64,000 bases of DNA, from assembly GCF_006345805.1 (NCBI RefSeq), contig NC_043000.1, forward strand, positions 118,668,001 through 118,732,000, written 5' to 3'. The position numbers and the translations under genes were made by a program. Of this stretch, positions 15,434 through 59,600 are shown one piece after another. Position 1 is the first letter of the stretch. Each line of letters begins with the position of its first letter. Source of the stretch: Octopus sinensis (lineage: Eukaryota). Below the pieces are notes generated by a model that saw nothing but the letters and a program-made list of their open reading frames with translations, was not told where the DNA came from and searched no databases.

Positions 15434-16484
15434 TTCTGAACTTGGACATAAATGTATCAATTTTGAAGGGAAGTGAGTCTTATCGATAGCTTCATCTTCC
15501 CCCCACCCCACCACGCAGCACTTGACTGATTCCTTACTTCATCGACCCCAGTAAGATGAAAGGCAAAGTTGATCTTGGCTGGATTTGAACACAAAACGTA
15601 AACAGCTGCAAGAAATACTGCAAAGAATTTTCTTCTGGCACTTTAAGGGCGAAAATATACAGTAGATATTGTAAAATATTTAGTCCAATAAGAAATAGAA
15701 AAAAAAACAAAAAAAAGCTGAAATGAATGAAATAAATAAATAAATAGATAAATAAATAAAAATGCAGAAACCGAGAAGGAGAGAAATAAAAGTAAAACCC
15801 ACGAACAAATAATTGGAAGTTGGCAGAATGGAAAAGGAAATTACCATGACATAAAATCAAAGAGGACTTTATTGCTATCTGTGTAGACATAAGCTAATGT
15901 AAAACGACACAAACTAACCGCATCACCTCCATATTTCCCAAGTCAACACCATTACGCAGAACGTAAACCAACTCGACAATAACGCTAATAATTCAGGATA
16001 TGCTAGGTAAATACTCAATGGGTTTGCTGAAGGGAAAAAACATACTTCTAGGTAGGCGTCATCGGAGTTAGGCGTAGCTTGTATGTATTTCTGAAACATA
16101 TTTCCACTGCTGGTTCGTGAATGTTATGATTATTAGGCCAAAAGAGAAAAAGCTCACACACACGTGTATACATACGCGCAAGTGCACATATGTATAATAT
16201 ATATATATATATATATATATACAAGAACTCACACCATGCGTCTATAATGCTTCTACGTTCCTCCAACTTGTAGTATACATACGTATGTATAACAGAGAAT
16301 CAAACAAGCTAATTGACATCGGGGATGATTTATTATTTCGGCGAAATAAATATTATTTATCTTCGATAATATTTTCTTTCTATTTTTTTCCTTTCTTCTC
16401 ATCCTGGTCAAGTAAGTGGCTATTAGCATGGAAATAAAAGATGATTTCTGATATAGGCAAAAGCTTCGGGTTTCTATTGGAGGG

Positions 16485-17101
16485 CCGCACACACACACGT
16501 GCGCACACACACATGCACACATTCACAAGCACACGCACACGCACACACATGCATGCAATCACGCACACATTCACACGCACACACAGTCACACACACACAC
16601 AGACGCATACACACGCACACACGCACACACACACGGCCACACACAGAGATACATACACACACAGACACACACAGAGATACATACACACACAGAGATACAT
16701 ACACACACACGCACACTCATACACACACGGACACACACGCATACACACACACGTACGCACACACAGCCACACACACAGACACATACATATACACACGCTC
16801 ACGCACACTCACACGCACATACACACACACATACACACACATGCCCACGCACGCACTCACACGCGCACACACAACCACGCACATTGGCACATACACATAC
16901 ATACGCACACACGCAAACACTCACATGCACACACACACACAGCCACACATACAGACACATACTCGCGCACACTCATACACACACGGACACATACACACGC
17001 GCACACACGCACACACACACGCACACATACACCCACACACACGCAGACACATACACATACACACGCGCACACACTCACGCACACATTCACACGCACACAC
17101 A

Positions 17102-17145
<44 letters not shown>

Positions 17146-17165
17146 CATGCACGCGTACACACACA
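16485..17165. repeat. Cryptic (CA)n-rich simple repeat (~680 bp)
   Basis: Degenerate CA/CG/TA dinucleotide tract; the source of many His/Thr and Cys/Val pseudo-ORFs. Confidence 0.95.
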
Positions 17166-17877
17166 AAACCGAAACCAATCACGCAAACCTTAAAGATGTC
17201 TTCTAGACATCATTAGGATTACAAAATCGATAAATGATATTACGGAACTGAATTTATTAAGAACACATTAATTACACATTTGATCTCTGAATATTTTATT
17301 AAGATCCTAAGGGATTTCTTGATCGATTTCATGAAAATGAAGAAATATTACGATATGAAGTAACCGTTACACAAAATCAGATTTAATAGGGAGAAAAACA
17401 TGATTTGGTTGCCCAAAATTATCTGCGCTAATTTGTGAATAGTACCACTAAGAGACCCCTTCCACATAAAGAAACCTCAATAAAAAAATATAAGTTTTAT
17501 AGACAAGGAAAATATGGCCTACCTCTATAAAAGCAAAATGACAATTGCTTTTATTGTGTTACCGCACGAATTCGACTAGTTACAAAGTCCTCATCTTGTT
17601 ACAATATCCCAGAGCGTGGTTCTGCAGTGGAAATTTAAAGAGAGAAACAGAGTTGGTGATTGCTGAAGATCAGGATGTAAAACTTATTTAATGAGTGAAA
17701 GTATATATTTCACTGTTTCAACGAATAAGTGCCGCCATTGTAATCATTAGACGGAAATTATTAGCCGTTTTGTGTAGCAGGACGCAAAATGTATGTCAGG
17801 GCAGAAAGAATACGAGAAGCGTCATGATAAGGTTTATCTGAATTTATTTCCAGTTACTTTGTTAAAAAATACTGGTG

Positions 17878-19904: not shown

Positions 19905-21693
19905 TGTGGCTAATGATTTTGGCAAAAGCGTTATTTGTGAGCACAAATATATAAATATGCAGGCAAAACGTTGATTCGTTTGAGCGAGTACGAACATATT
20001 AACAAAAAATAATAACACTTAAACCATATGAACAATAGTAAGGCGTGATACACAGTTATTCGTCTTAGTATTTGCATTGGCGACCCCTATTATTAGAGAC
20101 ATCCATGATTTTTTAGGCATGCTGGATTCCAATGACAGAGTCAGTTCTATGTTTACAGACCTCCATTTTTGCTGTACATTTTACATATGAAGTTCTTAAA
20201 ATTTCTCGTCGGAAGTAATCATGCATAGCACCATTTCATTCGTTTTAGAATTCATCAGCATTATATAATCTTGCATTTATTAATTAAACATTTTATGAGT
20301 CAGTTCTGAGTCAGTTCTATGTTTACAGACCTCCACTCTTGCTGTACGAGAGCTTTCGGCTATTCAATGTCTGTTGGCTTTTCTCTTGTCAACTCGGATT
20401 TTATCGATGAGCCACAATTTTCAATAGGATTTAAATCTAGAGAATTTCCCGGCCAAGGCTCCAAAATTTCAATACTTTATCTCCAAGATACTTTTCAATC
20501 TTTTTAGCAGTATGGCAAGATGCTCCATCATATTGGAAAATGTAAGTTTCTTCGCCAAACTGCCACTCAACGGTTGGAAAGAGATGGTTTTCAAGGATAT
20601 TTTGATGCCATTTGAAATTCATAGAAGTTTTTTTCGGCAAAACTGACAGTGATCCAACGTCCTTGGATGAAAAGCAACACCACACATGAATGGTTTCTGG
20701 ATACTTGACCGTGGGTACGATGCAGGCCTCATCATAACGTTCACCTTGCCGCCCTCAGATGAACCTTTTTCCAGATATCCCAAACAATGAAATGGTGCTT
20801 CATTTGGAAAAATCACCTTGTCCCATTTTTCACTAGACCAATTTTCATATTTTCTACAAAAGGCAAGCCTGTCCTCCACGTTTTTCTTGAACAAAAAAGG
20901 TTTCTTTGCAGCACTCCGTAAAGCGAGACCATTGTCAAGAAGTTGTGGAACAGTCCGCGTTGAAGCGTTGACACTGGCTGATTCCCACTCTTTAACAAGC
21001 TGTTTGCTGCCGGCACTTTGATTCCTCAATGAATTTCACACCAAAGCTCTGTCTCAGAGGACAGACGTTGATGACCAAGGTCCTTCTTCACCGTCATGGA
21101 TTCTGTCTCTTTGAAAGGTTTTTATAATCCTGTACACATTTCTTTCAGATGCAATGCCTTTAACAACAATATCGCGTGTTGTTAGGTCATTTTGGTGGAA
21201 AGAAATTATGACTGACGTTTTTTTTTTTTTTTTTTTTTTCTAGTTTCAGCTCAGAGCCGCGGCCATGCTGATGCACCGCCGTTATTTGCCTTTTCTGTTA
21301 TTTGTGCCAATATTATCCCTCCAATAAAAGAAAAGAAAATGTGAAGCTTGTGTAAAGCAAAAGAGCATTCATTAATTAAAAGTCAATTACAAAAGGCTCA
21401 TTACATCATATATAACTTTACCTATTGTTCTGGTTATTAATTATTAGCTTGCATGCGATTCCAACTTGGAATCATGAAGAGGAATGTGATTTCCACTTCT
21501 TGTAGGAAATATAACCAATTCCGCAGATTGATGATTATTTGCAATATCTATTGGTTTTCAGCAGTTTTTCTTTCAAATCTTATTGGATAACAGATAACCG
21601 GTTAAAATAATATAAAATTATTAACATTCACATAATATTTCATACGAAATAACAAAAAAAAACGGTATTTGCCAAAATCATTGCCCATGACTG
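19905..21693 (-). mobile_element. Tc1-family DNA transposon, decayed, about full length
   Basis: TIR pair ggctaatgattttggcaa (~19907-19925) and ttgccaaaatcattgcccatgactg followed by TA (21669-21695). Frameshifted transposase with AAKKPFL...RLAFC...W..VIF.NE, FQYDGASCHTAK and WPGNSLDLNPIEN. Confidence 0.85.
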
Positions 21694-24943: not shown

Positions 24944-25644
24944 TATTGTAGAAGACACTTACGCAGTGGAGCCAAAGCCTAAAACGCGGTTGCAATGAAG
25001 CTTCGTAGGCATATGGACATGCCTTGCATTGCTAACATAATATCCCTTTATGTCTGACGTAAACAATTTCAGGCCAATTCAGTTTACACATTTCGTTTTG
25101 AAAAGAACCTTGTGGAAATTCAGCTTGGACAGGTTCTATTTTTCGACCATACTTTATTAGTTCCCTTAAGCTATGACATGTGAATATTGTATGAGTCTCT
25201 GTCACATTGTGATCAGTCGCGCATTATTTGTGAAGCAACAATCTACTGGTGTTGTCGCTTCTGTTGGGCAAGGGATCATTATAAACACGTTTAAGTAGGG
25301 GAAAAAAATGGGAAAAACGAATGGAAAAATAAAAGCTTGTAGAAAGAACCATTCCAGTGTTTCTGAAACTTCGAGATTGTGTTTACGTTTCTTATTTCTT
25401 ATGGTTTCCATGAATAAGAAATAACAACGAAGTTAGGGGGAAAAAAGTTGTTTTCCAGTGAAAAAAACCTAAAAGTTATCTTTCTTTATATATATATATT
25501 AATTTTATATTTATTTTTTGTCAGAGTTAAGAACGTGACAATATTCTATTTTGTGTATCGTTATTGCTTGTTTGTTTGTTTTCATGTTTCGCTATCATCA
25601 CAATAGTTCTTCGTTTGTAATTAGTTTGTTAGCTTTCAAAACTG

Positions 25645-25663
25645 CAGTAATAATAATAATATA

Positions 25664-25708
<45 letters not shown>

Positions 25709-25745
25709 TAATAATAATAATAATAATAACAACAACAACAACAAC

Positions 25746-25785
<40 letters not shown>

Positions 25786-25794
25786 GTAATAGCA

Positions 25795-25833
<39 letters not shown>

Positions 25834-25856
25834 TAATAATAATAATAGTAATAGTA

Positions 25857-25889
<33 letters not shown>

Positions 25890-25903
25890 TAATAGTAATA
25901 GTA

Positions 25904-25958
<55 letters not shown>

Positions 25959-25996
25959 TAATAATAATAGTAATAATAATAGTAACAATAATAATA

Positions 25997-26046
<50 letters not shown>

Positions 26047-26047
26047 C
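25645..26047. repeat. (TAA)n-dominated triplet microsatellite with CAA/TAG/CAG variants (~400 bp)
   Basis: Seen directly. Confidence 0.95.
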
Positions 26048-27429
26048 TTAACCAGTGTCTGCGCATGTATCACGTAAAAATCAATGAGAGCTTTACATTT
26101 CCACAGGGATGCACCAGTCAAGTATATACACGAATATACTGTTGCAACGAAACACGCGTGCAAGCGTATGCATATAGTGCAAACATACATACATACATAC
26201 ATACATACATACATACATACATACATACATACATACATACATACACACTCAAAGAGGCAGATTTACGCACATACATGCACACATGCATACAAAGATACAG
26301 CACAGAAGTTCATACACGGATTCGTTTCAATTGAAGTTAGTCACGGAAAGTCGTTATTCGTTTTAAGAGTTAAACTGTAACATTACTTATTTATACATGT
26401 TCAACTTCCATAGATATATAGAGAAAACTGAGGCAGATTACTGCGCAAAAAAATAAGCAGAATAATACTCATAAAATGAACAATTTCATAGCGACATTCA
26501 AAGCTTTCATATCAACGCCTACTCTTAAAATGAGATTTTAAAAGCAAGAAAAACTAAAACGCACACGATACTAAAATAAACTGAGTGTTTACCCTCTGTT
26601 ATTTGATAAATTTTAACTACCAATACTGAATGATATCGTCACGTTTTATCGTATGAACAAAATGGAGAAACTTGAAATAATATCTACCCCGCCGTCAGAT
26701 TCGTCTTTCTCCTTAATAACAGCATCAAATTTCTAAACACATCAACCAAAAAAGAAATTACCATTACTTTATTCAATCAAAATAATTACTTTTTTGCTTT
26801 CCTGTACCAAATATTTTAATGAAACTATGCTTTTTAATGGAGGAATAAAATTATAATCATTTCCTGGTAGGTATATACACGTGATATTGTCACGACACTA
26901 GCAATAAATATATTCCGATGGCATCTAATACATTGAAAAACTAATCCCATGGACCTGTAACTCATAAAATAATTACAAGTCGTCTTTTTTTTTTCTGTTG
27001 CTTTTTTCAGGATTTTAGAGGGTTTTTCTCCTTTAGTTACTTTGGGAGAAAGCAATGCTCATAGACATTACTGAGATAACAGAATAAAGCTAACGCCTTC
27101 GTTGCTTGGCTTCAACTCTTTCAGAATGATTATTAAGTCGAAAGCAAAAACAGAAGAGATGTTCTTGGTGGATATGCAATCTTTTAAAAGAAAAGATTAT
27201 GGTGATCAAAGTTCTAAAAACAGAGTATAAATGAAAGGAGATATATATGGAAAGACGTGACTGGGGCGCAGGGCCGTATTAAGTCCCATAGAGGCTCTAA
27301 GCATTTGGAAGATTTGGGGGCCCCTTATATACATGTAACTTAAAATATAAACAATGATAAACCGTAAAATTTTGGGGTTTTTTCAAAATGAAATAAAACT
27401 AACTGTAAGATGGAAAATAATGTTTATTT

Positions 27430-39348: not shown

Positions 39349-39380
<32 letters not shown>

Positions 39381-39450
39381 TGATAAAACTGGTAAGACAA
39401 CAAAAGAAAGAAAGAGACCTCAATATTATGTAACTAGAGGAATTTATCTG

Positions 39451-39666
39451 TAAATGTAATATGTGACAATTGTTCGGTAGCCATGATAAAACTCCGAGTT
39501 TTGGATGCTGAAGTGGAAATCCATGCCGCTATCTCTTCAGTTATCCGGCCATCGAAGAAATCTTTGCTGATGGCCGGATAACTGAAGAGATAGCTGCGTG
39601 GGTTTCCACCTCAGCATCCGAAACTCAGAATTTTATTATGGCTACCGAATAATTGTCACATATTAC

Positions 39667-39671
<5 letters not shown>
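39451..39671. repeat. 103-bp inverted repeat (foldback) with a hammerhead-like motif in each arm; Penelope-like pLTR relic
   Basis: Arms 39451-39553 and 39569-39671 match at 94 of 103 positions around a 15-nt spacer. Each arm reads GATAA-CTGAAGA-long stem II-[G/A]AAA-CTC[G/A]GA[G/A]T-T-TTAT[C/T]. Confidence 0.85.
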
Positions 39672-39697
<26 letters not shown>

Positions 39698-40503
39698 ACA
39701 TTTATATATATATAACAGTCAGAGTATTGTGTATTGTAGCATATAAAAATAGTTAAAACAAAAAATATAACAAAGTTTAATACTTGTTTGATCAGACTAT
39801 AAGCACCATTTATAATGAAATAAAACCCAATGCCGGAGATACATTAAATTAGAAGTGATCTCTATGAAATTACCTTAATTGCATATATCAATATTATTCA
39901 CTCACCATGATCAACATTAGCTATAATTACTTATTAATAAATTGATAACCTTGGGGATTATTTATCAAGGAAACTAATACAAAAGAATTTACATTTTTAA
40001 AATGTAGGTCTACAGATTTTCCAATACAAGTCAATAATTAGTCTTTTATTGCATTTTCTCACAAGTCCCTTATTATCTATACTAAATTATAAAAGTAAGT
40101 TTTAATAGGAATATTAAATGTAAGTTTTAATAGGAATATTCTAATTATTAATTAAGAAAACAACCATGTTTCTAGGTTTGATGTTTCTTTTAAGGTTATA
40201 TGTTAAAAATATGGTTCTTTGAAATTGAAACATACTACTGTATTATTAGATGAAACATTAAAAAATATATGAAGTTGTTTTTCATTTTTGTATACAAAAG
40301 ATCGGTAAAAGAATATATTTACAAAAGATGGTTTGCCAGAATTTGTCAGATCTTGGGAGCGGTGTTGATGCAAACAGGAAATAGATGTCCACAAAACCTC
40401 CAAGACAAATACATTATGAAATTAGAAAAGTTAGAAAGAAGCAAATATAACGCTTAGATTTGTCTTTCAAGTTATATATTTTTTTTCCACTGTTATTTGC
40501 ATG

Positions 40504-40724
40504 TTAATAGCGTCGCATACGATGTGCTTTAGAGTCCACATTCTGGTCACGTGAGGAACTGATGCTTGCCACAAGCAAGCACATTGCTGAAAACAGGGAG
40601 AAGAAGCCAGAGAGTACACAAATACCAAAAGACCAGGATAAGTAGTTCTGATCAGGACGTGGCATCCACTGTCGATCTTCAGACTTCACTCCAAACACAA
40701 TCAAGGATATTGTAATTAGTAGAC
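40504..40724 (-). CDS. Claudin-like gene, terminal coding exon (TM3, second extracellular loop, TM4, C-tail)
   Basis: Acceptor ttttattttcaacAG (AG at 40726-40725). Splicing from 60037 gives TGT G|GT CTA = ...FLCGLLITISLIVFGVKSEDRQWMPRPDQNYLSWSFGICVLSGFFSLFSAMCLLVASISSSRDQNVDSKAHRMRRY-stop (TAA ends at 40504). The WMP....N.L.WS[FY] loop resembles invertebrate claudin-like proteins (Drosophila Kune-kune/Sinuous type, recalled not searched). Confidence 0.9.
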
Positions 40725-48446: not shown

Positions 48447-48486
48447 GGGTTTAACGTTTCAAGCAGAGCTCTTCGTCAGAAACATA
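48447..48486 (-). ncRNA. Minimal type I hammerhead motif in a Penelope-like repeat fragment
   Basis: Minus strand GTTT-CTGACGA-A-GAGC-TCT-GCTT-GAA-ACGT-T-AAAC: 4-bp stem I, 4-bp stem II with G.U closure, palindromic ACGU stem III. Confidence 0.6.
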
Positions 48487-50740: not shown

Positions 50741-51849
50741 TTATCCCATTCCCCTCTGACATTTAGTTGAAGCTGTTGAAAAAACCGCATTATTATATAT
50801 ATATACATACATACATACATATACACACACGCTCTCTCTCTCGCACACATGCACACATTTATATTCTGTTATTGTTTTATACGTTTCAGCTTTGAGGTTG
50901 TGGCCATGCTGGATCATGTGTGTGTGTGTGTCTATCTGTCTGTCTGTCTGTATGTATATATGTATATGTATGTGTGTGAACAATAATATTTTCAACAGAT
51001 GTGTTGCAAATGTATCTGATTGTTCTCAAGCTTCAATACTGTGTGTGTGTGTATGTGTGTGTGTGTATGTATGTATGTATATGTATGTATGTATGTATAT
51101 GTATGTATGTATATATGTGTGTATGTATGTATGTGTGTGTGTATGTATGTGTGTGTGTATGTGTGTGTATGTATGTATGTATGTATGTATGTATGTATGT
51201 AGAGTGTATGTTTACTTTATTACTAACACAAGCCACTACGGTTATTTAATGTAAAGTCTTCCTCAAATCACTCTCCCTGGCTATTTACTCTCTTCCAAGA
51301 ACATTTTCACTCACTTTTATCTGTTAGCTTCCCATACATTTTACTCATGTATCTATCAGTGTCATAGTCGTCATCGCATTCTATTGTCTACCTGTCAACA
51401 CACTGAATTAGTTTCACTTTATTCGTAGCACACTGTGTGTGTGCGTTTGCGTGTGGTGTAAACCACATTAAGAAGAGCATTTGACACACACACCAGAATG
51501 TGAGTTTTCTGTAAATTTTGCTTAATTGGAGTTTAAATTTAAAAAACTGGACCTGGCATGACGCGATGCATTGTACTCTTAAAAATGCTAGGTAAATTGT
51601 AATTGAAGAAATCCTATATTGTAGATTTGTATAACTCCCAAAGGGAGGCAGATAAAATCTGCCTTTTATAATAAGAGATACAAGAATACCAGTTTAATAT
51701 AATTCACCTCCAAAGGAACGAATATAAGGGATTAACTGTAAGTATTTGAAGAATGATCACATTGTACATTCAACTTGTTCAGCCCCAATTTTTTTTATGA
51801 TAATATACCATGGTATTCTTTATATTCTGTATTTAACCCTTTGGCAATT

Positions 51850-52420
51850 AAACAATATTTAGGTAGTGAGATAACGTTTTCAGGTGGCACTGACGAAGAT
51901 ATTAAGACGAGAATAAGTAAGGCAAGGACCGCTTTTTACCTGTTAAAGAAAGTATGGAGTGCAAGTGTAATTTCAATAAAGAACAAAATAAGAATTTTTA
52001 ACACTAACATAAAAGCAGTGTTATTGTATGGGGCTGAGACATGGCAAACAACAGTTAAGTCCATCACCTCCTCACCGTGGTGGGGACGCTGGCAATGGGT
52101 AGTGTCAGAACTATGCCGTCGGGAACTTCAATTCCTGGTAGAGCCACCCAAGGCGGATTGGTCTGACACCGAGTGGTATTAGGGCCACAACCCATGAAAA
52201 TCCTTGGAGTGTCTGTTTCCGCAACCGGTGGCTCCTCGGTTGTTCTTTCCCTGTGTCTGCGGACAATCTGCGGCAAATAGGATGTCTCTACATGCGGGGA
52301 CATTCATGGCAGAGTATAAGTACAGAAGCCAAAAATTATGCGACATGGAATTCAACTATAAGTGGCCTATACTCCGCGTTGGAGGGTTAAAGGCATAAAG
52401 AAGAAAGAAAGCAATTAAAC
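51850..52420 (+). mobile_element. Rearranged RTE-clade LINE fragment
   Basis: YLGSEITFSGGTDEDIKTRISKARTAF...KIRIFNTNIKAVLLYGAETW (51850-52060), an intervening segment that looks like an inverted RTE 5' region, and an RTE-like 3' end with a (GAAA)-type tail near 52400. Confidence 0.75.
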
Positions 52421-53330: not shown

Positions 53331-55641
53331 TGTCCTCATTGTCGTCATCATCATCATCATCGTCTAACGTCCATTTTCCATGCTAGCATGGGTTGGATGG
53401 TTCGACCGGGGTCTGGGAAGCCAGGGGGCTGCACCAGGCTCCAGTCTGATCTGGCAGTGTTTCTACGGCTGAATGTCCTTCCTAACGCCAACCACTCCGT
53501 GAGTGTAGTGGGTGCTTTTTACATGCCACCGGCACAGGTGCCAGGGGAAGCTGGCAACAGCCACAATTGGTTGGTGCTTTTTACGTACCACCAGCACAGA
53601 AGCCAGTCAAGGCAGTGCTGGCATCGGCCACGTAATTAAAAATCGTTAGAGATTACAGATTTCATTTATGTTTCTACAACTATACTTTTACTTGTTTTAA
53701 TCATTGGACAGCGTCCATGATGGGACATTACCTTTAAGGATATCTATCTATCCCTGTATTTATTTATTACTATTGATTATAAGCTTGGTACGTTTTTTTA
53801 TTGGACTCTTTTGCTGAGTTGCTAAGTTACACAGCTGTAAAAAAAACCAATGCCAGTTGTCAAGCAGTAAGGAAGAAACATACACATATATATTTATAGA
53901 GAGAGAGAGAGATAAAGAGAGAGTTATAGATAGATAGATACACACAGACACACACACATTTCAAAAGAAAGAAAGAGAGAAAGAGAGAGAGTGAAAGAAA
54001 GAAAGAGAGTGAAAGAAAGAAAGAGAGAAAGAAAGAAAGAGATAGAGAAAAAGAGAGAAAGAAAGAAAAAGAGATAGATAGATAGATGGACAGACATACA
54101 CACACCTACACACAAACATCTTCCTATCAATCAAATTCGTGTATCATTCATTAGTCAGCCCAAGATTACAGTAAAAGACTCTTGCCCAAGGTACCACACA
54201 GTGGAAATGAACCCAAAACCAAATGGCTACAAAGTGAGCTTCTAAGCTACACAGCCACACAATATCACACAGGAGCCTTCTCCTGCTACAAACAGATGCT
54301 GGGGACTGCCAGAGTTATAACAGTTGGCAGCTATTTTCTTCTCCCCAGACATCCAAATGTTTAATAATACAGCTGGCTTTTTATTGATAATGCTTTCATT
54401 TCATGACACACAAGGGTACAATTCACATATTTACAATGTCCATATGTGACTGTTTTTATGTCCCATTAACTCAATTGCACCAGGATGCATTTGTTTGATT
54501 CTAATAAATAATATCTTTCCAACAGGGTCGATGAAGTTTACAATGATCCAGCTGTAGATTATAACCTGAACAAATGTTTGTCAAGCATATTACATTTAAA
54601 ATAATATATTTTACAATGGCAGATTTTAAATATGGATTGACATATGTAGGTGTAGGCATGGCTGTGTGGTAAGAAGCTTGCTTCATAGTCACATAGTTCC
54701 AGGTTCAGTCAATCCTTTCCAGAAAGGATATATATCTGTGGGAGCCCTACCTGCTTAACCTCTGGCCAGAACCTAACGGCAAATTTCCTGAACTCACGCA
54801 GCCACCATGTTCATCCCAAGCAACAGCCCCAAAGCAAAAGAATCCCATAATAGTTGTCCTTCTGCTTCTGTCCTTCTAACAAGGACCCTTATTTGTTTGC
54901 ATAAAGTCACTGGCCTTATACTTCTAATCCCACTCAGCCCTTTGAACCATCAAAAAGAAAATGGTCTTAACCTTTAGCAATTCTCTAGAACATTTTAAAT
55001 TTAACAGATGACTTATAATAAAAATACAAAGCCACAAACTGAATTGCCTCCAACACTTAACTTTTGGCTAATCATGTATTTTTTTTTCTCTAGTTTCAGC
55101 TCAGAGCTGTGGCCATGCTGATGCACCGCTGTTTTGCTACACTGTTACTACTAAAAGTCTCCACTAATATGTGGCACTTGGTGAAGCATGGAATTTGATA
55201 TAGCTAACCTCATTTGCACCTCTTGCCGTGAGGTAGGTTCATCTGGGACTCTCGACAGGAAGAGGTCCAGCTTTGATTTAAAAATCCCTACATCTACTTT
55301 GTGCAAGTTCCTCAGACTCTTTGGAAGAATATTAAAAAACAGTGGGCTCTTGAAATCTTGTATGTATATATAATTTAATTAGAGGATATATTAACCTCGT
55401 AACAGAATGATTGCATTCAAGAAAACACTGGTTCTATACCTTTATATCTTTGGGAATGAACAGAGAAGTCAACATGTAATTTTTTAATGTACAACTTTTC
55501 CCTGAAGATATTTTACTCATAACTCATAAATGCAAATTTAATGCATAAATTTGTAATTTATTCAATGTATATAAATGAAAACAGCCGTAGGAAGAAATGA
55601 TTATCTATTTATTAATAGATAACTATTAACTCTCCATTTTC

Positions 55642-55674
<33 letters not shown>

Positions 55675-55676
<2 letters not shown>

Positions 55677-55968
55677 GGAGGCCCAATGGTCAGGGCAGTG
55701 GACTAGCGGTCACAGGATCGAGGTTTCAATTCCCAGACCGAGCGTTGTGAGTGTTTATTGAGCAAAAACATCTAAAGCTCCACGAGGCTCCATTGGCAAT
55801 CCCTGCTGTATTCTTTCGCCACAACTTTCTCTCACTCTTTCTTCTGTTGGCCTGCTCGCTTATTCAGCAGGGTGGCGTTATTTGAAGGCTAAAACCAATG
55901 CGAAGTGCAGTGTGACCAGCGATGTGTAGCAACATCTGATAGCCTGGTCGGTCACGGTGATCACGGTG
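55675..55968 (+). mobile_element. tRNA-derived SINE family D; related copies at 36228-36505 (minus) and a head at 2575-2703 (minus)
   Basis: ggaggc.caatgg head, gattcccagaccg B-box region, gtgtttattgagc, 3' gtgtagcaacatctgatagcctggtcggtcacggtga. Confidence 0.75.
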
Positions 55969-56746
55969 ATATATATATATACACACACACACATATACAC
56001 ACCCACATACACAAGTAATGTGCATACATAAGACATGTCTTATCAACATTATAAAAGGTTAGTCAGATTTCCTCTTTTCATTTTTTTTAACATTTTTTAT
56101 GTCAGGCTATAGCAATGTGGAAGAAGGCGGCAGTAGCTATGTTTATCTTATCTGTCACTAATTTCAGTCATTGGACTATGGCCATGCTGAGGCACTGCCT
56201 CAAAGATTTTAGTTGCACAAATCAACCTTGAATTTATGTTCTGATTTTTTTTTTGTCTGGTACATATTCTATCTATTTCTTAACTGAACTGCTAAGTTAC
56301 AGGGATATAAACTATCCAATCCATAGCAGCAAGGAAAAGTGGATGCTGAACGAAGCTAAAGAAAATGAGACACAGGGGGGTAACAAAACAATGCTTGATG
56401 TACAAAAGAGTAACAACTACTGAAAGGAGACAACAGGAATAAACTGTCATATTTTAGCATGGCTGTGTGGTCAAGGAATTTGCTTCACAACCCTGTGGTC
56501 TGAGGTCCAGTCTCACTGCTTGGCCCCTCAGGTAAATGTCTTCTACTTTAGCCACAAGATGACCAATGCCTCGTGAGTGAACTTGGTAAAGAAAAACTGT
56601 ATAGAAGTCAGTCATATATGTGTGTGTGTGTGTGTGTGGTCTTTCTGTAGGGCTTGACCCCCACCATCTTCTGACAACAATTGTTAGTCTAAGTATTTGT
56701 AACTTAGTAGTTCAGCAAAAGAGGTCAATAAAATAAGTACCAGACT

Positions 56747-57140
56747 TATATATATATATATAAAGCTGAAGTTGTCTGTGTATGGCAGGTTTGGTAGCCT
56801 TCAACTAACACTATCTCCTCCGAGACCCTGAGGTGCAAGTTAACCAAAATTGAGAGTATGATAGAAGAAGGCTTGCTCTTCCTTCCATAGAAGAAAAAAT
56901 TCAAATCAGACCATGTTAGGATCAAAAATTATTTACATCAAAAAGGTGCTTTTTTTTCTATGAAAATCCCTAGTTTTTACAATTTTTTGACTGCTGTGTT
57001 GCCATTTTTCAGTGTATTTCAACCAGAAAAATGTTCCCTTAAAGAGAATAACAAGCTACATAATGCAAAATTTTTACTTTTCAAAAATTCCATTTCTAAA
57101 GGGTTGAAACAAACCCAAGCAATGCTGGGCGATACTGCTA

Positions 57141-57141
<1 letters not shown>
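56747..57141 (+). mobile_element. Non-autonomous Helitron-like element, same family as 34865-35259
   Basis: Colinear over about 390 bp; ends gcaatgctgggcgatactgCTAG|T. Confidence 0.75.
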
Positions 57142-57186
<45 letters not shown>

Positions 57187-58090
57187 TGGAGTTGATTTGT
57201 TCAACTAAACCCTTTAAGGCAGTGGCCCCAGCATGGCCACAGTCCAAAGACTGAAATAGAATAAAAGACGATACATTATTTTTCTTTAACATTACTTAAT
57301 CACTGAGAAAGTTATGCAATATGGCAGCTCCTAGATAACCAGTCATGCATAACAGGGCTATTATTTTCTCACACCCATTTCTCTGCTTTAGCAGTTACTT
57401 CAATGCAAAATTACGAAGTTCAAGCAGAAAAAAATGTTGTAATAATAGCTGCAACCTTCAGTATAAGGTTTTACTATATTTCTGTATTTAAATTTTTTCA
57501 AGCCTCATATTTATTCTATCATTCTCTATTGCCAAACCACTATGTTATATGGACGTAAACATACCAACATCGGTTGCCATGCAGTGGTGGGGGACAAATA
57601 CAGACAAAACACACATATATATATATATATAAAGACAACAATAAGGATTTTAAGTTAGATTGGTTCATCATGTCCATATCTTTCCCTTATGATAAGGGGC
57701 AAAGGATTTTGTAACATTTGCAACTCTGAACTCTTCCATACTCTCTTCTCTAAGAATCACCTTGTTAACACACTTATAGAGTGATCTTACAAATGTAAGC
57801 ACTGGCAGAAACATACCTTTAGCTCATGTAATTGATTTTACCAGTCTTTATAGTTTGAACAGTTAGTTTAACTTGCACTTTACTTCAATAGAGAAATCTA
57901 CTTCCAAGCCTTTGAACATTTTTCAACCAATATATCCCTCTTAATTTGTTCTCTACTTATTATTTCTTCACCCCTTCTCTTCCTAGTGTCCGCCTTTGAC
58001 GTCGAATCTACTAATGGTTTTCTAAAATACTTAATAGCCTTCTGTTTATCATTTATGCAGTCATCAAAATTGTTATAATTGTTATAATGT

Positions 58091-58148
58091 CTTTCCTGAT
58101 GAGAAGATTGCATAAAACTAATGTTATCTTTGAAACATATGTCGAAAG
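58091..58148 (+). ncRNA. Type I hammerhead ribozyme motif, near-canonical
   Basis: CTTTC-CTGATGA-GAAGAT...ATCTTT-GAA-ACATATGT-C-GAAAG: stem I 5 bp perfect, stem II 6 bp with a G.U closing pair, palindromic stem III ACAUAUGU, GUC cleavage triplet (C58143). Confidence 0.75.
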
Positions 58149-58749
58149 TAAAAGAATTTGAATAGCATCTGCGCTCAACTCACTCTACTTAGATATATAT
58201 ATATACAGGCTTCTTTCAGTTTCTCTCTACCAAATGCAATCTTAAGGCCTAAGGCGAAAGTAGAGAACATTTACCCTAGGTGTCATGAAGTGGGACTGAA
58301 CCCGGAACCATATGGTTGGGAAGCAAGCCTCTTACCACACAACCACACTTGTGCAAACTTCAAATTCTCTTGAAAATATTTGTGTGTGTGTGTGAGTGCA
58401 TGTGTGAAATAACTTAAACTGATAATAAAATCTATGTCAAAGATCAACAATAAAATAGCAAAGCGATCAGCACAGATTTCCCACCCATAAAAGCAAGAAT
58501 AGACAGTAAGTATAAGACTTACATATAATCATTCTCTTTATATAAACGATACTGTAATACATATAAACCAAAGAGAGGGAGTCACTCAACCCTGCTAGAA
58601 ACAGCAGCTAATTCTCCTTCGTACCATATCTTGCCATCTAATAGAAAAGTGGCTGAGGAAAGAAAGAAGTGTCTCCAGGATAATTTAGTTCTTACAAACT
58701 GAGAGGATAATCACAGCCTGAATGCCTATGATAATCCTTTCTACTTATA

Positions 58750-59600
58750 GGTGCAGGAGTGGCTGTGTGGTAAGTAGCTTGCTTACCAACTACATGGTTC
58801 CGGGTTCAGTCTCATTGCGTGACACCTTGGGCAAGTGTCTTCTACTATAGCCTCGGGCCGACCAAAGCCTTGTGAGTGGATTTGGTAGCCCATCGTATAT
58901 ATGTATATATATGTATGTGTGTGTGTGTGTGTGTGTGTTTGTCCCCCCAACTTCGCTTGACAACTGATGCTGGTGTGTTTACGTCCCCGCAACTTACCGG
59001 TTCGGCAAAAGAGACCGATAGAATAAGTACTAGGCTTACAAAGAATAAGTCTTAGGGTCAATTTGCTCAACTAAAGGCGGTGCTCCAGCAGAGCCGCAGT
59101 CAAATAACTGAAACAAGTAAAAGAGTATAGGTGCAAGGCCTTAAATTTTATATGGAGGAGTTTAGTTCATATCACTGACCCTGGTACACAACTGGTACTT
59201 ATTTCAGCAACCTTGAAAGGATGATAGGGGAAGACAACCTTGCCATAAAGGCATGGCTGTGTGGTAAAAAATAAGCTTCCCAACCACATGGTTCTGGGTT
59301 CGGTCCCCAGAGGGCACCTTAGATAAGTGTATTCAACTATAAGCCTCGAGTCAGCCAAAGACTTGTGAGTGGATTTGGTAGACAGGAACTGAAAGAAGCC
59401 TATTTTGTGTGTGTGTGTTTGTGTCTGTTCCCCACCACCACTTGACGCCAGGTGTTGGTATGTTTACATCCCCATAACTTGGTGGTTCAGCAAAAGAGAC
59501 AGGTAATAGAAGTACCAAGCTTATGGCTAAAATTCTTCAAGGTGGTGCCCCAGCATGGTCACAATCTAATGACCAGAAACAGGTAAAAGATAAAAGATAG
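58750..59600 (+). mobile_element. Two tandem family A SINEs (58750-59130, 59250-59600)
   Basis: Family A head, body and tail in both; the second is more decayed. Confidence 0.85.

What the first reader, a model, noticed from the sequence alone, without database searches (positions are those of the whole stretch)
39451..39671. 3' UTR foldback with a hammerhead in each arm; the mRNA-sense copy has lost catalytic G12
Seen: 103-bp arms, 9 mismatches. The plus-strand arm (39577-39637) has an intact CUGAAGA...GAAA core with one stem III mismatch. The minus-strand arm (39485-39545), which is sense to the claudin-like mRNA, has perfect stems I (GAUAA/UUAUC) and III (ACUC-G-GAGU) but GAAA changed to AAAA (position 39502). 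In the mRNA the hairpin would contain 5 A.C mismatches, 3 G.U pairs and 1 A.G. Established: G12 is the general base of the hammerhead, A.C mismatches in long duplexes are favoured ADAR sites, and coleoids edit RNA heavily. Inference: a Penelope-type relic tolerated or co-opted as a UTR dsRNA element, with the self-cleaving risk removed. Caveats: stem II needs bulges, transitions dominate neutral decay anyway, and UTR inclusion is unproven.
Basis: partly seen in the sequence, partly recalled or inferred. Interest (0 to 1): 0.75.

Follow-up and report, generated by a model that had tools for sequence, protein, structure and literature searches.

The report
Decayed twin hammerhead retroelement foldback
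A 221-bp hairpin-forming DNA relic, most likely two back-to-back tail ends of a hammerhead-carrying Penelope-type retroelement that landed in a TA microsatellite downstream of a claudin-like gene, and whose ribozyme damage looks like ordinary mutational decay rather than adaptation.

Summary
The arms are 39451-39553 and 39569-39671: 103 nt each, 9 mismatches, a 15-nt spacer. The right arm has an intact CUGAAGA...GAAA hammerhead core on the + strand. The left arm has AAAA at 39502 on the - strand. The counts of 5 A.C, 3 G.U and 1 A.G for the minus-strand RNA are correct.

A strict hammerhead descriptor expects 0.023 hits per shuffled window and finds 2. No Rfam hammerhead model matches, and no related copy was found anywhere.

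The layout fits published Penelope-like element insertions: head-to-head copies truncated at the 5' end, 3' ends pointing outward, a hammerhead about 34 nt from the 3' end, (TA)n on both sides, and an extra segment at one end only.

The adaptive reading is not supported:
- The G12-to-A change is a CpG-to-CpA transition, in a window with CpG o/e 0.63.
- One core hit among 9 differences is expected (P = 0.65).
- The other arm has independently lost helix III.
- The hairpin (-158.8 kcal/mol) would out-compete either ribozyme fold, and ribozymes of this type need dimers.

Inclusion in the 3' UTR and RNA editing cannot be tested here. The element starts 833 nt after the stop codon, and several poly(A) signals lie before it. 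Verdict: an ordinary decaying transposon relic of low interest.

The parts
39451..39553 (-). Left arm: 3'-terminal fragment of the element, sense on the minus strand. It contains the hammerhead relic 39485-39545 (-) with G12 replaced by A at 39502, and two helix II mismatches at 39524 and 39527.
39554..39568 (.). 15-nt spacer, which forms the hairpin loop. It is probably the slightly longer 5' end of one copy, or a snap-back loop.
   Evidence: The origin is inference.
39569..39671 (+). Right arm: the same 3'-terminal fragment, sense on the plus strand. It contains the hammerhead motif 39577-39637 (+) with an intact CUGAAGA...GAAA core. Helix III is broken by two G-to-A changes at 39627 and 39630.
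39358..39380 (.). Left (TA)n run, proposed as half of the microsatellite target.
39381..39450 (-). 70-bp unique segment between the left (TA)n run and the left arm, with no counterpart on the right. It is a candidate PLE 'tail', an extension present at only one end of an insertion unit.
   Evidence: for the sequence; for the published tail. Assigning it as a tail is inference, and it is longer than the typical 30-40 bp.
39670..39696 (.). Right (TA)n run, directly abutting the 3' end of the right arm.
39693..39714 (+). Second copy of the terminal 12-mer ATATTACATTTA plus (TA)n. It duplicates 39660-39681 at a 33-bp spacing.
   Evidence: family D3. Its meaning is unexplained.
40504..40724 (-). 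Terminal coding exon of a claudin-like (PMP22/EMP/claudin) gene. It has a polypyrimidine tract and a CAG acceptor at about 40725, and a TAA stop at 40506-40504. The foldback begins 833 nt downstream.
40045..40050 (-). First canonical AATAAA after the stop codon (455 nt downstream), about 375 nt before the foldback. ATTAAA hexamers lie at 40131-40126, 40106-40101 and 39781-39776.
39632..39637 (-). AATAAA hexamer inside the foldback, in the 5' arm of an mRNA-sense transcript. It is created by the T at 39637 that distinguishes the two arms.

Best explanation
The foldback is a dead insertion relic. It consists of two head-to-head, severely 5'-truncated copies (about 103-118 nt) of the 3' end of a hammerhead-bearing retroelement of the Penelope-like (PLE) kind, inserted into a (TA)n microsatellite about 0.8 kb downstream of a claudin-like gene.

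In both arms the ribozyme sense runs from the centre outward, so the truncated 5' ends meet at the 15-nt spacer and the 3' ends abut the microsatellite. Such a pair can arise in two ways. Both cleaved target strands may prime reverse transcription, as reported for a PLE protein in vitro. Or a short cDNA may snap back and prime on itself.

At insertion the arms were identical and each carried a minimal type-I hammerhead: a 5-bp helix I, a long bulged helix II, and a small palindromic helix III that works only in dimers. They have since diverged by about 9.5% (K2P) through neutral change that is mostly transitions and rich in CpG sites. This decay has disabled both copies in different places:
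- Minus arm: G12 and two helix II pairs.
- Plus arm: helix III.

If the region is transcribed in either direction, the RNA forms a 103-bp imperfect duplex, not a ribozyme. That duplex would be a generic substrate for dsRNA-binding enzymes.

Shown: the anatomy, the statistics, the energies and the CpG context. Inferred: PLE parentage, the mechanism of formation, and neutrality.
For: - Anatomy and mismatch census.
- Hammerhead descriptor: 0.023 hits expected, 2 observed.
- Motif traits match published PLE min-HHRs: 4-5 bp helix I, enlarged helix II, palindromic 15.2-16.2 and loop 3, and dual motifs on opposite strands 100-700 bp apart.
- PLE insertions commonly carry an adjacent inverted 5'-truncated copy, a tail at one end only, hammerheads near the 3' end, and (TA)n targets.
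- A PLE protein cleaves and extends both strands in vitro.
- A second, unrelated hammerhead-like motif at 58091-58148 has the same layout: it lies 43 nt before a (TA)n run, in a roughly 560-bp unit between two TA runs, and its centroid fold is the hammerhead.
- Neutral decay: three differences, including G12, are CpG-to-CpA, and 4 of 9 touch CpG columns (P = 0.01). Window CpG o/e is 0.63 and TpG+CpA is 1.22. At least one core hit has P = 0.65. The A.C to G.U split has P = 0.73.
- Restoring the CpG states alone restores both G12 and the G22-C33 pair of helix II.
- The hairpin at -158.8 kcal/mol compares with hammerhead folds of -1.6 to -9.5.
- Hammerhead_1 hits and Penelope elements are reported in a cephalopod genome.
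Against: - No reverse transcriptase or GIY-YIG coding sequence lies next to the element, and no other copy of the arm is in the window.
- No copy turned up in the protein collection with a six-frame peptide query. A 19-mer scan of metagenome contigs gave only 3 chance bacterial matches. Family membership and helix covariation are therefore untested.
- No Rfam hammerhead model matches.
- An extra C sits between helix II and G12, where published min-HHRs have the extra base between positions 9 and 10.1.
- The cleavage triplet would be GUU, which is unusual.
- The 70-bp one-sided segment is longer than the published 30-40 bp tail.
- (TA)n runs are common here (30 runs of at least 7 units in 64 kb), so the left run 70 bp away is weak evidence.
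- TA flanks also fit a Tc1/mariner-type MITE, and a Tc3-type transposase remnant exists in the window.
Confidence: 0.55

Rival explanations
1. The foldback lies in the 3' UTR of the claudin-like mRNA and has been kept or co-opted as a dsRNA or ADAR element. On this view, loss of G12 in the mRNA-sense copy was favoured because it removes self-cleavage.
For: The AAAA copy is on the same strand as the claudin-like exon. The hairpin is long and stable. The mRNA-sense RNA would have 5 A.C mismatches. The element is only 833 nt past the stop codon, a plausible UTR length.
Against: - The G12 change is a CpG transition, and a core hit is expected by chance (P = 0.65).
- The non-mRNA arm is equally disabled.
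- The ribozyme could not fold against a -158.8 kcal/mol hairpin, and min-HHRs do not cleave as monomers. There was little risk to remove.
- There is no excess of pair-preserving G.U in the mRNA sense (3 of 8).
- AATAAA and ATTAAA signals lie between the stop codon and the element, and one lies inside it.
- No transcript or editing data are available.
Confidence: 0.07
2. The element is a foldback MITE of a DNA transposon, for example Tc1/mariner type with a TA target duplication. On this view the hammerhead-like motif is a coincidence.
For: It is a near-complete palindrome of 221 bp. A TA dinucleotide can be read at both ends (TA|AATGTAAT...ATTACATT|TA). A Tc3-type transposase remnant lies at 20619-21029.
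Against: - The strict hammerhead descriptor is expected only 0.023 times per window.
- CpG-based polarisation, which does not depend on the motif, restores both G12 and a helix II pair.
- The termini do not match any other sequence in the window, including the region around the transposase remnant.
- A second hammerhead-like unit next to (TA)n has the same layout without being a palindrome.
- The TA ends cannot be told apart from the microsatellite.
Confidence: 0.15
3. The element derives from a different hammerhead-bearing non-autonomous retroelement, of the retrozyme or SINE-like kind, rather than directly from an autonomous PLE. It was later duplicated in inverted orientation.
For: Type-I hammerheads in animals are mostly carried by non-autonomous repeats. 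No PLE coding sequence is nearby.
Against: Animal retrozymes are direct tandem repeats of 170-400 bp, and this is a single inverted pair. The long helix II and minimal helix III fit PLE min-HHRs better than canonical retrozyme hammerheads with loop-loop contacts. A recent preprint argues that animal retrozymes are themselves PLE-dependent, so this rival overlaps with the best explanation.
Confidence: 0.15
4. The element is a hairpin RNA gene, such as a microRNA or endo-siRNA precursor.
For: Sub-threshold Rfam matches to several miRNA hairpin models (mir-4 at 40 bits against a gathering score of 70, and others). The hairpin is very stable.
Against: All these matches are far below gathering score, hit unrelated families on both strands, and are the generic response of hairpin models to inverted repeats (the same caveat appears). 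The 103-bp stem is much longer than a pre-miRNA. There is no conservation evidence.
Confidence: 0.03

Closest known systems
Minimal type-I hammerhead motifs (min-HHR) of metazoan Penelope-like elements (Cervera and De la Pena 2014, PMC4209133)
   Same: CUGANGA...GAAA core, a short 5-bp helix I without a defined loop 1, an enlarged helix II with an unpaired base, a tiny quasi-palindromic helix III suited to dimers, and occurrence as dispersed single or dual motifs on opposite strands 100-700 bp apart.
   Different: Helix II is longer (31 nt, two bulges). The extra unpaired base is on the 3' side, next to G12, rather than between positions 9 and 10.1. The cleavage triplet is GUU or AUU. One copy lacks G12. 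No family of copies was available to show covariation.
PLE insertion architecture: partial tandem plus adjacent inverted 5'-truncated copy, one-sided tail, microsatellite targets (Craig et al. 2021, PMC8557442; PAc in vitro study, PMC11167929)
   Same: Head-to-head orientation with 3' ends outward, a hammerhead near the 3' end, (TA)n on both sides, and an extra unique segment at one end only.
   Different: Both copies are truncated to about 100 nt. There is no reading frame or pLTR. The (TA)n preference was described chiefly for Naiad PLEs, which lack canonical hammerheads. The one-sided segment is 70 bp rather than 30-40 bp.
Inverted-repeat transposon pairs in 3' UTRs as ADAR substrates (for example inverted Alu pairs in human mRNAs; from my own knowledge)
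   Same: If transcribed, two inverted copies of a retroelement would form a long imperfect intramolecular duplex.
   Different: Transcription, UTR inclusion and editing are all untested here. The duplex comes from a single twin insertion, not from two independent insertions.
Animal non-LTR retrozymes and satellite hammerheads (newt satellite 2, Schistosoma Sm-alpha, mussel and axolotl repeats; PMC7229834)
   Same: A type-I hammerhead with a weak helix III that depends on dimer formation.
   Different: Those are direct tandem repeats that give circular RNAs, with conserved loop 1-loop 2 contacts. This is a single inverted pair with no recognisable loop contacts.

Membership tests
Hammerhead ribozyme (type I) | Conserved core C3 U4 G5 A6 N7 G8 A9 ... 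G12 A13 A14 | tested here: inconclusive
   Met in the + arm (CUGAAGA...GAAA). Not met in the - arm (AAAA, A at 39502).
Hammerhead ribozyme (type I) | Three helices around the core, with the 16.1-17 UH cleavage site and the A15.1-U16.1 pair | tested here: met
   Helix I has 5 bp in both arms. Helix II has 11 bp with bulges in the + arm and two fewer pairs in the - arm. Helix III is 3 bp plus a triloop, or a quasi-palindrome, in the - arm, and is broken in the + arm. The UU site is present. The hammerhead fold is not the minimum-energy structure of either arm.
Hammerhead ribozyme (type I) | Match to a curated covariance model (Rfam Hammerhead_1, _3, _II, HH9, HH10) | tested here: not met
   No hammerhead family is listed at gathering score or at E <= 10 in the 341-nt and 91-nt searches. 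The cleaner motif at 58091 also reaches only 19.8 bits against a different hammerhead model, so these models are insensitive to this variant class.
Hammerhead ribozyme (type I) | Occurrence above chance | tested here: met
   The strict descriptor expects 0.023 hits per shuffled window and finds 2.
Hammerhead ribozyme (type I) | Self-cleavage activity, and covariation in the helices across family members | not testable with these tools
   No related copies were retrieved. Activity needs a bench assay.
Penelope-like element (insertion relic) | RT plus GIY-YIG reading frame, or sequence homology to a PLE consensus | tested here: not met
   The six-frame translation of the element itself (39380-39760) shows only stop-interrupted frames with no long ORF, as expected of a roughly 100-nt 3' fragment. 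The flanks were not screened for RT or GIY-YIG. The arm has no other copy in the window. The frame inspection covered 54001-58200, upstream of the second motif, not this locus. No TE consensus library was available.
Penelope-like element (insertion relic) | Inverted 5'-truncated copy adjacent to a direct copy, with 3' ends outward | tested here: met
   In both arms the ribozyme sense runs from the centre outward. The arrangement is described.
Penelope-like element (insertion relic) | Hammerhead motif close to the 3' end or within the pLTR | tested here: met
   The motif ends 34 nt before the end of each arm.
Penelope-like element (insertion relic) | Microsatellite target, and an optional tail at one end | tested here: inconclusive
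   (TA)13 abuts the right end. (TA)11 lies 70 bp from the left end, with a unique 70-bp segment in between. TA runs are frequent in this window, and the segment is longer than a typical tail.
MITE (Tc1/mariner-derived) | Terminal inverted repeats flanked by a TA target duplication, with many copies and termini shared with an autonomous transposon | tested here: inconclusive
   TA can be read at both ends but cannot be told apart from the microsatellite. No other copy and no matching terminus occur in the window. Genome-wide copy number is not testable here.
Animal non-LTR retrozyme | Direct tandem repeats of 170-400 bp, each with a type-I hammerhead | tested here: not met
   The only direct repeats around the element are microsatellite-related. 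The two copies are inverted.
3' UTR dsRNA / ADAR substrate | Long intramolecular duplex within a mature transcript that shows A-to-I editing | not testable with these tools
   Duplex potential is shown. Transcription, the poly(A) site and editing need RNA data. Candidate poly(A) signals lie upstream of the element and inside it.

The most novel reading that the evidence does not exclude
The foldback is included in the claudin-like 3' UTR, and ADAR edits its A.C mismatches. Two of the five A.C sites in the mRNA-sense RNA are exactly the G-to-A decay sites of the sense hammerhead: A12 at 39502 and A22 of helix II at 39524. Editing would therefore rewrite them to inosine, which behaves like G. 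At the RNA level this would restore the catalytic base and a helix II pair, giving an editing-gated self-cleaving element in an mRNA tail. Nothing here excludes this reading. But it needs UTR inclusion, editing at those sites, escape from a -158.8 kcal/mol hairpin, tolerance of the remaining G.A mismatch in helix II, and dimer-independent activity.
Probability: 0.02. Interest if true: 0.8.

Novelty: new member of a known kind. Interest (0 to 1): 0.2.

Why it matters
As it stands, this is one more decayed hammerhead-bearing retroelement fragment in an animal genome. It is useful mainly as an annotation: repeat, not gene. It is also a worked example showing that a lost catalytic base in one of two inverted copies is what CpG decay predicts.

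Two modest points of value remain. First, the twin 100-nt head-to-head structure, bounded by a microsatellite with an extension on one side, is a compact footprint of PLE-style integration that primes on both strands. Second, the window holds another hammerhead-like unit next to (TA)n. Together they suggest that a class of (TA)n-targeting hammerhead retroelements could be catalogued in this genome.

If the hairpin does turn out to be transcribed within the claudin-like mRNA, it would be a candidate dsRNA editing or silencing substrate, as inverted repeats in other animals' UTRs are.

Tried and rejected
1. Rfam at gathering score on the whole window, and at E <= 10 on 341-nt and 91-nt slices. 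No hammerhead family appeared. The only matches were sub-threshold generic miRNA-hairpin hits, rejected as the usual response to inverted repeats.
2. Search for other copies in the window by blastn with word size 9. Only (TA)n matched.
3. Search for family copies elsewhere through chance-called ORFs. All 12 reading frames of both arms were concatenated as a 519-aa query against the 5.8-billion protein collection. Nothing scored at E <= 10.
4. Metagenome contig scan with the 19-mer GGATAACTGAAGAGATAGC. The three hits are GC-rich bacterial contigs with no similarity beyond the seed.
5. The same species' claudin-like gene in public assemblies, to get transcript contigs covering the UTR. Only 62-65% identical homologues were found. 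The contig behind P0001 is genomic, from a distant relative, and aligns only within the exon.
6. Full-text search for two stretches of the window's abundant SINE-like repeat, to identify the organism. No hits, so 'coleoid' stays unverified. My recollection that this repeat resembles octopod SINEs is only a lead.
7. Alignment of the foldback arm with the second hammerhead unit at 58 kb. They share no homology beyond the core, so they are different families.
8. Inspection of translations upstream of the 58-kb motif for RT or endonuclease. No long open frame was visible.
9. Test for an excess of differences inside the ribozyme part of the arms. Eight of 9 fall there (P = 0.056), but the excess disappears once CpG columns are set aside (P = 0.30). 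It was rejected as a signal.
10. tRNA scan for SINE heads. None found.
Full report
WHAT IS THERE

Positions 39451-39553 and 39569-39671 are inverted copies of 103 nt with 9 mismatches (8 transitions, 1 transversion) around a 15-nt spacer. The repeat finder extends the arms to 130 nt only by running into AT-rich flanks. The real similarity stops at 39451 and 39671. Transcribed from the minus strand, the region folds into a single hairpin of -158.8 kcal/mol. Shuffles average -48 kcal/mol, giving z = -24.5.

THE TWO HAMMERHEAD MOTIFS

Read from the centre outward, each arm carries the same 61-nt motif.

On the plus strand (39577-39637) it is GAUAA-CUGAAGA-GAUAGCUGCGUGGGUUUCCACCUCAGCAUCC-GAAA-CUCAGAA-U-U-UUAUU.

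On the minus strand (39485-39545) it is GAUAA-CUGAAGA-GAUAGCGGCAUGGAUUUCCACUUCAGCAUCC-AAAA-CUCGGAG-U-U-UUAUC.

So are its statement that G12 is A at 39502 in the minus-strand copy, and its census of 5 A.C, 3 G.U and 1 A.G for the minus-strand hairpin.

Two details need correction:
- ACUC-G-GAGU cannot close on a one-base loop. As a monomer it is 3 bp with a triloop. Its real character is a quasi-palindrome that would pair between two molecules (-14.1 kcal/mol for the minus-arm version).
- The minus-strand copy also has two broken pairs in helix II, at 39524 and 39527.

IS THE MOTIF MORE THAN CHANCE?

I wrote a strict type-I descriptor: exact CUGANGA and GAAA, 5 of 5 pairs in helix I, at least 3 pairs at the base of helix II, up to 12 nt of helix III, and a UH site. 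In 300 dinucleotide-preserving shuffles of the window it averages 0.023 hits on both strands together. The real window has two: the plus arm, and an unrelated motif at 58091-58148.

Against this, no Rfam hammerhead model matches. There is no hit at gathering score on the whole window, nor at E <= 10 on 341-nt and 91-nt slices. The listed matches are sub-threshold miRNA hairpin models, the usual response to any inverted repeat. Neither arm adopts the hammerhead fold as its minimum-energy structure. The hammerhead fold costs -1.7 and -1.6 kcal/mol, against MFEs of -13.4 and -8.1.

The much cleaner motif at 58091 serves as a control. It reads CUUUC-CUGAUGA-...-GAAA-CAUAUG-UC-GAAAG, and its centroid fold is the hammerhead. 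It too gets only 19.8 bits against one Rfam hammerhead model whose gathering score is 56.3. The Rfam negative therefore says little about this variant class.

WHAT KIND OF HAMMERHEAD, AND WHAT KIND OF ELEMENT

Published minimal hammerheads of metazoan Penelope-like elements (PLEs) have these traits:
- a short helix I of 4-5 bp without a defined loop;
- an enlarged helix II with an unpaired base;
- a vestigial, palindromic helix III that implies action as a dimer;
- wide sequence variation;
- scattered single copies, sometimes as two motifs on opposite strands 100-700 bp apart.

The motif here fits all of these. It departs in the side on which the extra base sits (a C next to G12) and in the unusual GUU triplet.

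PLE insertions are described as heavily 5'-truncated. They often carry an inverted 5'-truncated copy abutting the direct one, so that inverted repeats form, and a 30-40 bp tail at only one end. Hammerheads lie near the 3' end, and microsatellites including (TA)n are preferred targets. A purified PLE protein cleaves and extends both target strands in vitro.

The foldback matches this footprint:
- Ribozyme sense runs outward in both arms, so the truncated 5' ends meet at the spacer.
- The hammerhead ends 34 nt before each outer end.
- (TA)13 abuts the right end.
- (TA)11 lies 70 bp beyond the left end, and the unique 70-bp segment between them has no counterpart on the right.

The second motif at 58 kb has the same layout. 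It sits 43 nt before a TA run, in a roughly 560-bp unit between two TA runs. It shares no sequence with the foldback beyond the core.

My best explanation is therefore a twin, head-to-head pair of 3'-terminal fragments of a hammerhead-bearing PLE-type retroelement. It would be generated either by priming on both target strands or by snap-back of a short cDNA, during insertion into a TA microsatellite.

This is not proven. No reverse transcriptase or GIY-YIG sequence is attached, and no other copy was found in any of three places:
- the window;
- the protein collection, using a 12-frame peptide query;
- metagenome contigs, which gave three chance bacterial matches.

A TA-flanked foldback MITE with a coincidental motif remains possible. 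The window does contain a Tc3-type transposase remnant.

THE ADAPTIVE CLAIM

Six observations argue against giving the data that weight.

1. The change is CCGAAA to CCAAAA, a CpG-to-CpA transition. Three differences between the arms are of this type, and 4 of 9 touch CpG columns (hypergeometric P = 0.01). The window as a whole is CpG-depleted (o/e 0.63) with an excess of TpG+CpA (1.22).
2. With 9 differences in 103 columns, the chance that at least one falls in the 11 invariant core columns is 0.65. Which arm receives it is even odds.
3. The plus-strand copy cannot endanger the claudin-like mRNA, yet it has also been disabled. Two G-to-A changes in helix III, one of them a CpG decay, take the dimer helix from -14.1 to -1.0 kcal/mol and leave a C.A mismatch next to the cleavage site. 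Decay is symmetrical.
4. In a transcript of either strand, the sense ribozyme is always the 3' arm, made after its complement. A -158.8 kcal/mol duplex competes with a fold worth at most -9.5 kcal/mol even in the restored ancestor.
5. PLE minimal hammerheads show no detectable cleavage as monomers, and only weak cleavage as dimers. A single sense copy in an mRNA is not much of a hazard.
6. Every transition between the arms must appear as A.C on one strand's RNA and G.U on the other's. A 5:3 split has P = 0.73. The mRNA sense shows fewer, not more, pair-preserving G.U pairs than the opposite sense.

The apparent clustering of differences inside the ribozyme (8 of 9, P = 0.056) vanishes once CpG columns are set aside (P = 0.30). 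Polarising only by the CpG rule gives an ancestor with intact G12 and an intact G22-C33 pair. This supports the view that a functional-looking hammerhead was inserted and then decayed.

GENE CONTEXT

The minus-strand frame at 40507-40749 matches Pfam Claudin_2 (34.9 bits against a cut-off of 29.1). It also matches two Claudin_2-bearing proteins at 62-65% identity. It is preceded by a polypyrimidine tract and a CAG acceptor at about 40725, and ends in TAA at 40506-40504. 'Claudin-like' and 'same strand' are therefore confirmed.

The foldback begins 833 nt downstream of the stop codon. Between them, on the minus strand, lie ATTAAA at 40131 and 40106, a canonical AATAAA at 40050-40045, and ATTAAA at 39781. 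Another AATAAA lies inside the foldback at 39637-39632, created by one of the arm differences. In such AT-rich DNA these hexamers prove nothing either way.

I could not obtain transcript evidence. The gene of this species is not in the searchable collections, and the nearest contig is genomic DNA from a distant relative that aligns only within the exon. UTR inclusion, editing and the coleoid origin of the window remain untested. Hammerhead_1 hits and Penelope elements are at least documented in a cephalopod genome.

COMPARISON AND NOVELTY

The object works like, and most probably is, a decayed PLE-type min-HHR relic in the inverted-pair configuration already described for PLEs. It fails the Rfam model test, lacks the RT/EN test, and cannot be tested for covariation or activity. 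I therefore file it as a probable new member of a known kind, not as a demonstrated family member. It is not a retrozyme, since it has no direct tandem, and it is not a credible miRNA gene. If it is transcribed, its nearest functional analogue is an inverted-repeat transposon pair forming UTR dsRNA.

MOST NOVEL READING NOT EXCLUDED

Two of the five A.C sites in the mRNA-sense hairpin are the G-to-A decay sites of the sense ribozyme: A12 at 39502 and helix II A22 at 39524. A-to-I editing there would restore G-like bases at the RNA level. An editing-gated ribozyme is conceivable, but it needs a chain of unverified steps, and I give it about 2%.

VERDICT

The 'Penelope-type relic' reading is supported. 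The selection and co-option reading is not supported. UTR inclusion and editing are undecidable here. Interest is low (0.2).

Noticed in passing
window 58091-58148 (+), unit about 57632-58191: A second, cleaner hammerhead-like motif: CUUUC-CUGAUGA-[29-nt helix II]-GAAA-CAUAUG-UC-GAAAG. It has a perfect 5-bp helix I, a palindromic loop 3 and a GUC site, and its centroid fold is the hammerhead. It lies 43 nt before a (TA)n run, in a roughly 560-bp unit between two TA runs. It has no sequence homology to the foldback and no other copy in the window. Rfam gives only a weak RAGATH-1-hammerhead hit (19.8 bits)..
   Followed up: partly
window 48448-48484 (-): A third, weak hammerhead-descriptor hit (UGUUU-CUGACGA-...-GAAA-CG-UU-AAACC), with only 4 of 5 helix I pairs and a poor helix II. 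The relaxed descriptor expects 0.17 hits per shuffled window, so this is probably chance.
   Followed up: partly
window 39660-39681 and 39693-39714: The terminal 12-mer of the right arm plus a TA run (ATATTACATTTATATATATATA) occurs twice, 33 bp apart. This could be microsatellite slippage or part of the insertion footprint. It is unexplained (D3).
   Followed up: no
window 39632-39637 (-): One of the nine arm differences (T at 39637) creates a canonical AATAAA on the mRNA-sense strand, inside the 5' arm of the would-be hairpin. If used, transcripts would end before the second arm is made.
   Followed up: no
window 40085-40134: A 25-bp tandem duplication (88% identity) in the putative 3' UTR region. 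Each copy carries an ATTAAA hexamer on the minus strand.
   Followed up: no
window 20619-21029 (-): ORF fragment matching the Tc3-type transposase HTH domain (PF01498, 36.7 bits). This is a Tc1/mariner remnant, which is relevant to the MITE rival.
   Followed up: partly
window 51775-52182 (+): ORF fragment matching DUF6451 (54.3 bits). From memory, this domain sits at the C-terminal end of RTE-type retrotransposon reverse transcriptases.
   Followed up: no
window 56504-56765, 58246-58351, 58754-59125, 59249-59590 and others: Several diverged copies (72-88% identity), in both orientations, of a SINE-like repeat that carries internal TG/TA microsatellites. Its translated fragments (...LVLGRASSCR...) recur in many ORFs across the window. 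ARAGORN finds no tRNA-like head. From memory it resembles octopod SINEs, but this was not verified.
   Followed up: partly
whole window: The window shows features typical of a methylated animal genome. CpG o/e is 0.63, with TpG+CpA at 1.22. Microsatellites are very dense: 30 (TA) runs of at least 7 units, and long CA/TG and homopolymer-coded tracts, for example at 16441-17216 and 25629-26238.
   Followed up: no
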